The position numbers and the translations under genes are program-made. Source: Hypanus sabinus (lineage: Eukaryota). From it: a DNA stretch of 64,000 nt. The DNA lies in NCBI RefSeq assembly GCF_030144855.1, contig NC_082739.1, forward strand, positions 6,820,001-6,884,000, in the 5' to 3' direction. Shown piece after piece: positions 39,458 through 39,730 of the stretch. Under the pieces are notes generated by a model, which saw only the letters and a program-made list of their open reading frames with translations, made no database searches and was not told the DNA's origin. The number at the start of each line of letters is the position of its first letter. Position 1 is the stretch's first letter.

Positions 39458-39730
39458 AAATGATGCAGGTAGAGGATGCCAAAATGGGAGAACTCGGTTC
39501 TTCAGGGGGCGAGAAGGTAGCTGATTCAAACAGGTACAAGGAAGCCCCCGGTACACCAACGCGAAGCAGCGTCATCACCAGTGCCCATGAACTGCATTAC
39601 ATTCATGAAGAGAATTCTGGAGAACAGCCTCCTGCAGCTGGGCTTGGGCCACAGGTGGGGATAGAGAACAATTCCAGTACGCAAGACGAGAGGCACACCA
39701 CATTGTACCCCCTTCAAATCAACCGCAGGA
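39458..39730 (+). pseudogene. Inverted partial duplicate of ZBTB16 coding sequence (copy of 36514-36795) in intron 1
   Basis: Manual alignment gives 273 aligned nt, 21 substitutions (about 92% identity) and two in-frame gaps (3 and 6 nt). Translation MMQVEDAKMGELGSSGGEKVADS...LYPLQINRR matches the exon. Confidence 0.95.

What the first reader, a model, noticed from the sequence alone, without database searches (positions are those of the whole stretch)
39458..39730. Inverted copy of ZBTB16 coding sequence inside its own intron 1: a built-in cis-antisense arm
Seen: 273 nt at 39458-39730 (+) duplicate exon positions 36514-36795 (-) at about 92% identity, 1.9 kb upstream of the acceptor. Inference: if the promoter at about 50 kb drives the gene, the pre-mRNA contains this segment antisense to the exon. 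It could then fold into a duplex of about 270 bp whose loop (about 2.7 kb) encloses the 3' splice site, the uORF and the start codon. Established: long intramolecular duplexes are ADAR substrates, can alter splicing and can yield endo-siRNAs. This would be a gene-specific, non-transposon self-regulatory hairpin on PLZF, a regulator of spermatogonial stem cells and innate-like T cells in mammals. I know of no description of it but cannot search.
Basis: partly seen in the sequence, partly recalled or inferred. Interest (0 to 1): 0.85.

Follow-up and report, generated by a model that had tools for sequence, protein, structure and literature searches.

The report
Inverted ZBTB16 exon copy in intron
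A backwards copy of about 400 bases of the PLZF (ZBTB16) coding exon really sits in the gene's first intron in this cartilaginous fish and at least six relatives, but it behaves like an old duplicate kept similar to the exon by gene conversion, not like a demonstrated RNA switch.

Summary
Window 39458-39730 (+) matches exon positions 36795-36514 (-) at 92% (89% counting a 9-nt in-frame gap). After a 52-nt insertion, a 73% tail follows (39783-39856 vs 36513-36435).

The exon (36269-37590, acceptor AG 37592-37591) is ZBTB16 exon 2. The copy lies 1.87 kb upstream of the acceptor in unique intron sequence. It has no poly(A), target-site duplication or transposon flank.

Contigs from public runs of six other coded organisms (about 2-5% diverged) carry the copy at the same junctions, so it is neither an artefact nor young.

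The high identity comes from recurrent gene conversion:
- identity falls in steps, with 6%, 15% and 24% of sites differing;
- in organisms A, C and H a core (170 nt in A and C) is shared by exon and copy as one double-depth graph node;
- that node carries species-specific variants.

Otherwise the copy decays. It changes at least as fast as its flanks and has frameshifting indels in H.

A real strand skew (12 G>A, 0 C>T) is compatible with G.U pairing, but equally with one-strand cytosine deamination.

The pre-mRNA could form a duplex of about 330 pairs. The same-species RNA contig shows no consensus-level editing, and low-level editing could not be tested. The scan holds an unchecked note of a similar antisense exon copy (FUCA1) elsewhere in this genome.

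The parts
39458..39730 (+). Block 1 of the inverted copy. It is sense-oriented on the + strand, so antisense in the ZBTB16 pre-mRNA.
   Evidence: It is 92% identical to exon 36795-36514: 22 mismatches and a 9-nt in-frame gap. Contigs of organisms A, B, C and E bridge the left junction.
39494..39663 (+). Core of the copy that is re-homogenised with the exon (gene-conversion tract). It pairs with exon 36581-36750.
   Evidence: In X1 and X3 a 170-nt contig of double depth lies on 36581-36750, and in X1 all four flanking contigs overlap it by exactly 30 nt, as do the three present in X3. X13 shows the same right boundary at 39663.
39731..39782 (+). 52-nt insertion (filler) that interrupts the copy and bounds the high-identity block.
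   Evidence: It is absent from the exon and present in E, F and H contigs. Its first 13 nt are the reverse complement of 39855-39867.
39783..39856 (+). Old, decayed tail of the copy.
   Evidence: It is 73% identical to exon 36513-36435 and collinear with block 1. The identity step against block 1 has Fisher p 3e-4.
36435..36795 (-). Source segment inside ZBTB16 exon 2 (hinge region between the BTB domain and the zinc fingers). It is the downstream arm of the potential RNA duplex.
36269..37590 (-). ZBTB16 exon 2: 5'UTR part, a uORF at 37536-37495, the ATG at 37492, the BTB domain and the hinge.
   Evidence: AG at 37592-37591 and GT at 36268-36267. A 1349-nt contig of the RNA-like run X6 covers exactly 36269-37590 with no difference. 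Pfam BTB match, 1e-25.
37707..39213 (.). Very high-copy interspersed repeats that make up more than half of the spacer between the arms.
   Evidence: Summed contig depth is 10^4-10^6 here against about 5-15 elsewhere. Contigs of A, B and C run from unique sequence 70-100 nt into the repeat block at its left edge (37707), and contigs of A and B about 55 nt at its right edge (39213).
48001..50500 (-). CpG-island-like stretch, the likely promoter and exon 1 region upstream of the copy.
   Evidence: CpG observed/expected is 0.67-1.04 against 0.34 for the whole window. No RNA evidence was obtained here.

Best explanation
This is an old, DNA-level, inverted partial duplicate of ZBTB16 exon 2. About 360 nt of the hinge-coding part was copied into intron 1, probably by a replication template switch. 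The copy is non-coding. Its central 170-270 nt stay close to the exon because the two arms exchange sequence by recurrent short-tract gene conversion (concerted evolution). Everything outside the converted core decays. Between conversions the core also decays, mostly by C-to-T changes on the minus strand (G>A on the plus strand). As a by-product, the pre-mRNA carries two arms that can pair into a duplex of about 330 pairs around the 3' splice site and start codon. That pairing is physically plausible but is not shown to be selected or to regulate the gene. Shown: the copy, its extent, its presence in related species, the identity steps, and the shared exon/copy node with species-specific variants. 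Inferred: template-switch origin, conversion as the homogenising process, and neutrality.
For: (1) Anatomy: the copy has both ends inside one exon. It has no poly(A) at the sense 3' end, no flanking direct repeats and unique flanks (depth 5-15). A 13-nt inverted microhomology links the filler to the right junction. (2) Age and distribution: contigs of organisms A, B, C, E, F and H carry the copy, and those of E, F and H also show the 52-nt insertion and the tail; A and C contigs run across that region. The tail has 24% mismatches, far more than the 2-5% divergence between these species. (3) Conversion: differences rise in steps, with 10/170 in the core, 10/67 in the right part and 18/74 in the tail (Fisher p 0.036 and 3e-4). 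In X1 and X3 a 170-nt node (36581-36750) has double depth, and in X1 both exon contigs and both copy contigs abut it with 30-nt overlaps (in X3 three do). So exon and copy are identical there. X3's node carries variants at 36656 and 36689 that X1's node and the window's exon lack, meaning a change is present in both arms of one species. X13 branches into an exon path and a copy path at the same boundary, 39663. (4) No constraint on the copy: window vs B shows 11/273 differences in block 1, against 7/244 in the left flank and 7/491 in the right flank. H's copy has 1-nt insertions at 39669, 39670 and 39710 and pair-breaking transitions. CpG count falls from 12 in the exon arm to 9 in the copy. 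(5) Polarity: a distant shark cDNA agrees with the exon at 12 of the 16 block-1 sites where it matches either arm. All four other species have G at 39529, 39587, 39624, 39686 and 39702, so those are changes in the window's copy.
Against: Identity of the arms in A, C and H is inferred from contig topology and depth, not read from long reads. All cross-species data are low-coverage Logan contigs, some of which are mosaic exon/copy paths. Persistence of a near-perfect core across a whole clade would also be expected if the duplex were selected. The strand skew (12 G>A, 0 C>T) is not predicted by plain neutral decay. Function was not tested directly.
Confidence: 0.65

Rival explanations
1. Selected cis-antisense hairpin. 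The copy is kept because it pairs with the exon in the pre-mRNA, and the duplex tunes PLZF through ADAR editing, Dicer products or splicing.
For: Both arms lie in one transcription unit. The predicted duplex has 328 intermolecular pairs, 23 of them G.U. The copy is present in at least seven related organisms, with a perfect or near-perfect core in A, B, C, F and H. Fifteen of 16 transitions between the arms keep a G.U pair (binomial p 5e-4). A/G-type changes are more frequent inside block 1 than outside it (12:5 vs 3:7, p 0.057).
Against: C-to-U on the RNA-sense strand is by definition both 'G.U-compatible' and 'one-strand cytosine deamination', so the skew does not discriminate between them. 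Transversions, which always break pairs, are not depleted (6 of 22). The window's lineage gained about 9 changes in 273 nt, more than the flanks predict (Poisson p 0.0002-0.02); selection can filter changes but cannot accelerate them. H's copy has C>T and A>G changes and indels in the right part. Shared species-specific variants point to conversion. The exon contig of the same-species RNA-like run has 0 differences from the DNA. Selection on single mismatches in a 270-bp stem would be very weak.
Confidence: 0.15
2. Retrocopy or transposon-captured gene fragment: a piece of ZBTB16 mRNA or DNA carried into the intron by a mobile element. In this reading the G>A excess is the footprint of cDNA deamination.
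For: G>A on the sense strand is the classic signature of first-strand cDNA deamination (general knowledge). Abundant interspersed repeats lie nearby. An A9 run abuts the copy's sense 5' end.
Against: There is no poly(A) at the sense 3' end and no target-site duplication. Both ends are internal to one exon. Flanks of 245 nt and 420 nt are single-copy. G>A changes arose at different times in different lineages rather than in one event. No AID/APOBEC motif stands out (WRC at 4 of 12 sites, from the contexts).
Confidence: 0.04
3. Assembly artefact or collapsed haplotype.
For: None beyond the general risk at inverted repeats.
Against: Contigs from independent runs of A, B, C and E span the left junction. 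Contigs of A, C, E, F and H cover the right part. A same-species RNA-like run covers 39661-39879 with no substitution difference (one gap). An 8% divergence from the exon is too high for an allelic collapse.
Confidence: 0.01

Closest known systems
Concerted evolution of inverted paralogous segments by non-allelic gene conversion (gene/pseudogene pairs such as CYP21A2/CYP21A1P; arms of sex-chromosome palindromes). From general knowledge.
   Same: There are two copies in inverted orientation on one chromosome. Identity is mosaic, with sharp steps. Tracts are tens to a few hundred bases long. Species-specific variants are shared by both copies.
   Different: One partner is a 270-nt internal piece of a single coding exon, and the other lies 2.7 kb away in the same gene's upstream intron. 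Both arms are therefore also in one pre-mRNA, and copy-to-exon transfer would hit the PLZF hinge directly.
Editing-site complementary sequences (ECS): intronic sequences that pair with an exon to make an ADAR substrate, as at the GRIA2 Q/R site. From general knowledge.
   Same: An intronic stretch complementary to coding exon sequence of the same pre-mRNA.
   Different: An ECS is short, imperfect, usually downstream and conserved. It is defined by a specific edited adenosine. Here the arm is 270-400 nt and upstream, is not conserved beyond its flanks, and no editing was seen at contig level.
Inverted Alu or other repeat pairs in introns as long dsRNA: ADAR hyper-editing substrates and drivers of back-splicing (PMC4053975 for Alu-driven editing).
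   Same: Long near-perfect intramolecular duplex with a kilobase-scale loop.
   Different: The arms are not transposons and one arm is coding sequence. For circRNA formation both arms normally lie in flanking introns, which is not the case here.
Hairpin-RNA / proto-miRNA loci born by inverted duplication of their target gene (plant MIRNA origin, 10.1101/682591; Drosophila hpRNAs and mouse oocyte pseudogene endo-siRNAs from general knowledge).
   Same: An inverted duplicate of gene sequence that can pair with the parental sequence.
   Different: In those loci both arms are copies in a separate transcript acting in trans. Here the second arm is the functional exon itself, acting in cis. No small-RNA data were available.

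Membership tests
Non-allelic gene conversion / concerted evolution between inverted paralogous segments | Mosaic identity with abrupt steps along the paralogous alignment | tested here: met
   Differences are 10/170 in the core, 10/67 in the right part and 18/74 in the tail. Fisher p is 0.036 and 3e-4.
Non-allelic gene conversion / concerted evolution between inverted paralogous segments | Lineage-specific variants present in both copies of one species | tested here: met
   X3's shared 170-nt node carries variants at 36656 and 36689 that are absent from X1's node and from the window's exon. The node has double depth and 30-nt overlaps with its flanking contigs. This is inferred from graph topology, not from long reads.
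Non-allelic gene conversion / concerted evolution between inverted paralogous segments | Within-species identity of the copies exceeds what their age allows | tested here: met
   The core is identical in A and C and near-identical in B, while the tail of the same duplicate has 24% mismatches.
ADAR editing-site complementary sequence (exon-intron duplex) | Intronic sequence complementary to the exon within one pre-mRNA | tested here: met
   328 predicted intermolecular pairs. The acceptor is used, and intronic RNA-like contigs include 39661-39879. Strand of the intronic RNA is not known.
ADAR editing-site complementary sequence (exon-intron duplex) | A-to-G differences between RNA and DNA in the paired exon | tested here: inconclusive
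   The X6 exon contig (depth 40) has 0 differences over 36269-37590. Contigs hide minority variants, and no raw RNA reads were offered.
ADAR editing-site complementary sequence (exon-intron duplex) | Complementary element conserved above the neutral level | tested here: not met
   Block 1 differs between the window and B at 11/273 sites, against 7/244 and 7/491 in the flanks. H's copy has indels.
Processed pseudogene / retrocopy | Poly(A) tail at the sense 3' end and target-site duplications | tested here: not met
   There is no A-run after 39856 and no direct repeats of 8 nt or more flanking the copy.
Transposon-captured gene fragment | Fragment embedded in a repeated element | tested here: not met
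   The flanks 39214-39457 and 39857-40277 have single-copy depth in four runs.
Inverted-repeat-driven circRNA exon | Complementary arms in both flanking introns, and back-splice junction reads | tested here: not met
   The downstream arm lies inside the exon. No 36269-to-37590 'goes back' joint appeared among the 15 joints shown (1342 more were not shown). Raw reads were not available.
hpRNA / endo-siRNA locus | 21-23-nt small RNAs from both arms | not testable with these tools
   No small-RNA runs were offered.

The most novel reading that the evidence does not exclude
The exon-intron duplex is a working part of the gene. Gene conversion keeps a perfect core of about 170 bp, and G.U-compatible drift is tolerated. 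The resulting nuclear dsRNA is then edited or diced to set the PLZF dose, for example in the germline. That would make it a gene-specific, non-transposon, self-targeting hairpin conserved across a clade of cartilaginous fishes.
Probability: 0.12. Interest if true: 0.8.

Novelty: new variant of a known kind. Interest (0 to 1): 0.42.

Why it matters
If the best explanation holds, this is a clean natural example of a coding exon in concerted evolution with a pseudo-copy in its own intron. Three consequences follow:
- the decayed copy can donate several amino-acid changes at once to the PLZF hinge;
- inverted arms 2.7 kb apart could in principle flip the 5' half of the exon;
- every transcript carries the makings of a long dsRNA, so it is a ready test case for how cells tolerate self-dsRNA in an essential developmental regulator.

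The one-strand substitution skew, which recurs in several lineages and is confined to the duplicated block, is a small open problem. Telling RNA-level G.U tolerance apart from DNA-level deamination or biased mismatch repair during conversion is directly testable with more species.

Tried and rejected
- **Assembly artefact:** rejected by junction-spanning contigs from independent runs.
- **Retrocopy or TE capture:** rejected. There is no poly(A), no TSD, and the flanks are single-copy.
- **Coding function of the 108-aa ORF in the copy (39460-39786):** rejected. It has no Pfam hit, is frameshifted in H, and surviving 22 substitutions without a stop is not unusual.
- **Known RNA family:** none in 36000-41000.
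- **Editing test:** both run searches returned only Logan contigs and no raw RNA reads, so only consensus-level editing could be excluded.
- **Elasmobranch loci:** the ZBTB16 gene range (232 kb) is too long to fetch. Two 2-kb shark/ray contigs around exon 2 have no inverted repeat, but they reach only 567 nt upstream of the start codon.
- **Regional mutational asymmetry as the cause of the skew:** window-wide composition implies only about 1.2-fold. A transposon-family control inside the window was not feasible, because only 32 repeat HSPs were found and no family had 3 or more copies.
- **AID/APOBEC motif:** the deaminated C is preceded by a purine at 10 of 12 sites, but WRC occurs at only 4 of 12, and enrichment was not tested against background (contexts).
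- **Single hypermutation burst:** rejected, because the G>A changes map to different lineages.
- **Literature:** no paper on a ZBTB16 exon-derived inverted repeat or PLZF antisense arm was found.

Full report
**Observation**

The window holds one strong inverted repeat between 35 and 41 kb. Its arms are 36514-36765 and 39479-39730: 252 nt, 92% complementary, 2713 nt apart. A sensitive self-comparison extends the match to 39458-39730 against 36795-36514. That is 282 columns with 22 mismatches and one 9-nt in-frame gap, E 9e-105.

Positions 39783-39856 match 36513-36435 at 73% (E 6e-6), starting at the very next exon base. The duplicated piece is therefore 361 nt of exon, represented by 399 nt of intron.

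**Gene context**

- The minus-strand ORF 36266-37492 encodes a BTB domain (Pfam E 1e-25).
- It is 84-86% identical to ZBTB16 of sharks, with Pristiophorus japonicus and Rhincodon typus as named hits.
- The exon is 36269-37590, with AG at 37592-37591 behind a pyrimidine tract and GT at 36268-36267.
- Run X6 has 166 Mb of contigs and is therefore RNA-like. It comes from organism D and shows no substitution against the window in any of its four unique-sequence contigs, so it is the window's species. It has a 1349-nt contig lying exactly on 36269-37590 at depth 40, plus 27 further letters at one end.
- X6 also has low-depth (3-4) contigs on 38931-39124, 39143-39344 and 39661-39879.
- The acceptor is therefore used, and the intron around and inside the copy is represented in RNA. 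Its strand is unknown.
- A CpG-island-like stretch at 48.0-50.5 kb (observed/expected 0.67-1.04 against 0.34 overall) is the likely promoter.

**What kind of copy**

- Both ends fall inside the exon, in the hinge between the BTB domain and the zinc fingers.
- There is no A-run after the sense 3' end and no flanking direct repeat of 8 nt or more.
- The 245 nt to the left and 420 nt to the right are single-copy in four runs (depth 5-15). By contrast, 37707-39213 between the arms is very high-copy repeat, with summed depth of 10^4-10^6.
- The first 13 nt of the 52-nt filler are the reverse complement of 39855-39867, at the right junction.
- These features fit a DNA-level, replication-type template switch. 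They do not fit a retrocopy or a transposon cargo. This origin is inferred, not shown.

**Independent support and distribution**

Twenty public runs from 13 studies hold part of 39000-40200. Organism names are coded, so the species are not known to me. Laid as contigs:

- **A (X1), B (X2) and C (X3)** differ from the window by 1-4% in the intron and under 1% in the exon, so they are other species. They carry the copy with its junctions (X2: 39156-39780; X1: 39158-39523 and 39638-40300; X3: 39244-39523 and 39638-40300). Their contigs also run from unique sequence into the edges of the repeat block between the arms.
- **E (X8)** bridges the left junction (39400-39487) and has the right part from 39724 onward.
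- **F (X11)** carries the arm, the 52-nt insertion and the tail on one contig.
- **H (X13)** carries the right part, the insertion and the tail.

The copy, the insertion and the decayed tail therefore predate the split of all seven organisms. The tail has 24% mismatches, against 2-5% between species (estimated from k-mer shares and contig differences). The duplication is several times older than this radiation.

**Why the arms are still alike: gene conversion**

1. *Stepwise divergence.* Differences rise along the copy: 10/170 in 39494-39663, 10/67 in 39664-39730, and 18/74 in the tail. The Fisher tests give p 0.036 for the core against the right part, and 3e-4 for block 1 against the tail.
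2. *A shared graph node.* In X1 and X3 a 170-nt contig on 36581-36750 has about twice the depth of its neighbours (16.5 vs 9; 12.1 vs 5-8). In X1 the exon contigs end at 36610 and start at 36721. The copy contigs of both runs end at 39523 and start at 39634. These are the same positions in copy coordinates, each giving exactly a 30-nt overlap. X3's downstream exon contig stops at 36525 and does not reach the node. With 31-mers this is what a segment shared by both arms looks like. Exon and copy are therefore identical over 170 nt in A and C, whereas the window has 10 differences there.
3. *Shared species-specific variants.* X3's node carries variants at 36656 and 36689 that X1's node and the window's exon lack. 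A species-specific change is thus present in both arms, which is the hallmark of concerted evolution.
4. *The same boundary in H.* In X13 a contig runs from the exon's upstream flank to 39663. It then branches into a copy path, and an exon path whose loose end reads the exon's continuation.
5. *Mosaic states.* B's true copy (left flank attached) has the exon's state at 8 of the 22 sites. E's and F's contigs switch from exon-like to copy-like states inside stretches where the arms are identical.

**The copy is not conserved for its own sake**

- Between the window and B, block 1 has 11 substitutions in 273 nt. The left flank has 7 in 244 nt and the right flank 7 in 491 nt.
- H's copy differs from the window's by 19 substitutions and 6 inserted letters in 233 nt, including single-base insertions at 39669, 39670 and 39710. 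This also destroys the 108-codon ORF that the window's copy happens to keep.
- A distant shark cDNA (L001) sides with the exon at 12 block-1 sites and with the copy at 4, so most changes are on the copy.

**The strand skew**

*What is seen.*
- Exon-to-copy differences in block 1 are 12 G>A, 0 C>T, 3 T>C, 1 A>G and 6 transversions. In the tail they are 7 G>A and 4 C>T.
- Given 89 G and 64 C, 12 of 12 has p 0.0015. Allowing the roughly 1.2-fold asymmetry implied by the window's base composition gives p 0.0036.
- Five of the G>A changes (39529, 39587, 39624, 39686, 39702) are specific to the window's lineage, because B, E, F and H all have G there.
- Others map to other branches: 39664 and 39666 in B, F and H; 39495 in B.
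- My count of independent events is about 15 G>A to 2 C>T (p 0.012). This is a recurring process, not one burst.
- Between species, A/G-type changes dominate inside block 1 (12:5) but not outside it (3:7; p 0.057).

*What it means.*
- This confirms the companion note s1-189567. Fifteen of 16 transitions leave a G.U pair in the RNA duplex (p 5e-4).
- But 'C-to-U on the RNA-sense strand' and 'G.U-compatible' describe the same set of changes. The skew alone therefore cannot show selection for pairing.
- Four points argue against selection: transversions are not depleted (6 of 22); the window's lineage gained about 9 changes where the flanks predict 2-4 (p 0.0002-0.02); H shows pair-breaking transitions and indels; and selection on one mismatch in a 270-bp stem would be minute.
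- I favour a DNA-level cause tied to the exchange itself. One option is deamination of the exposed strand during break repair (strand-coordinated clusters in repair-associated single-stranded DNA are described in PMC6786661). Another is strand-biased repair of T.G against A.C mismatches in the heteroduplex.
- This is conjecture. No AID/APOBEC motif stands out.

**RNA potential**

- The two arms can form 328 intermolecular pairs, 23 of them G.U. In A, C and H the core would be perfect.
- Long inverted repeats are established ADAR substrates (PMC4053975; general knowledge).
- Here the only RNA evidence is negative and weak. The X6 exon contig equals the DNA at every base, which excludes majority-level editing only.
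- No raw RNA reads or small-RNA runs were offered. No Rfam family matches.

**Comparison with what is known, and verdict**

- The behaviour is that of gene/pseudogene pairs and palindrome arms that undergo non-allelic gene conversion. All three defining features tested were met.
- It resembles an ADAR ECS or an inverted-Alu duplex in shape. It fails the conservation criterion, and the editing criterion is untested.
- It resembles hpRNA and proto-miRNA births by inverted duplication (10.1101/682591), except that one arm is the live exon.
- I found no description of such a copy in ZBTB16.
- An unchecked note from this scan reports an antisense copy of a FUCA1 exon end in the same genome, so such local inverted duplicates may not be rare here.
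- Verdict: a real, old, clade-wide inverted exon fragment in concerted evolution with its parent exon. The regulatory-hairpin reading remains possible, at about 0.12-0.15. I rate it a new variant of a known kind, of moderate interest.

Noticed in passing
39400-39870 in runs X8, X11, X13: Contigs in organisms E, F and H join the exon's upstream flank directly to the arm. In E and F they continue into the copy-like right part. F's single 1176-nt contig runs on through the 52-nt insertion and tail to 39857. The most likely cause is a de Bruijn path through the shared node after clipping of the short copy-left branch. A real inversion allele, from recombination between the inverted arms, would give the same junction.
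   Followed up: partly
39731-39743 and 39855-39867: The first 13 nt of the 52-nt filler are the exact reverse complement of the sequence at the copy's right junction (E 0.03 in the window). This may be a template-switch microhomology.
   Followed up: no
39214-39457: The unique left flank of the copy has an extreme strand composition (G 35, C 66, A 82, T 61). This is in the same direction as the G>A skew in the copy, and much stronger than in the right flank or the window as a whole.
   Followed up: no
24501-26500: A second CpG-island-like stretch (GC 0.55-0.61, CpG observed/expected 0.6-0.87) lies in intron 2, downstream of exon 2. It has no tandem repeats. It may be an internal promoter or an enhancer.
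   Followed up: no
37495-37536 (-): A 13-codon uORF in the 5'UTR part of exon 2 ends 2 nt before the main ATG at 37492.
   Followed up: no
36442-36950 in run X2: Organism B's contigs leave a 509-nt hole over exactly the exon arm and a little more, while its copy is covered by one contig. The cause may be the tool's filter for human-like conserved sequence, or low coverage.
   Followed up: no
exon 2 protein, 36269-37492 (-): The protein is only 84-86% identical to shark and ray ZBTB16. Sharks (Chiloscyllium, Scyliorhinus, Mustelus, Heptranchias) and rays (Mobula, Hypanus, Pristis) share one 90% cluster. The window may therefore come from a lineage outside that group, perhaps a holocephalan. This is not established.
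   Followed up: partly
36632 (-), exon: At 36632 the window's exon has a synonymous A where its own copy has G, and where the shared exon/copy node of A and C and all contigs laid there from B, E, F and H also have G. This is a window-lineage change in the exon that has not been copied to the intron arm.
   Followed up: yes
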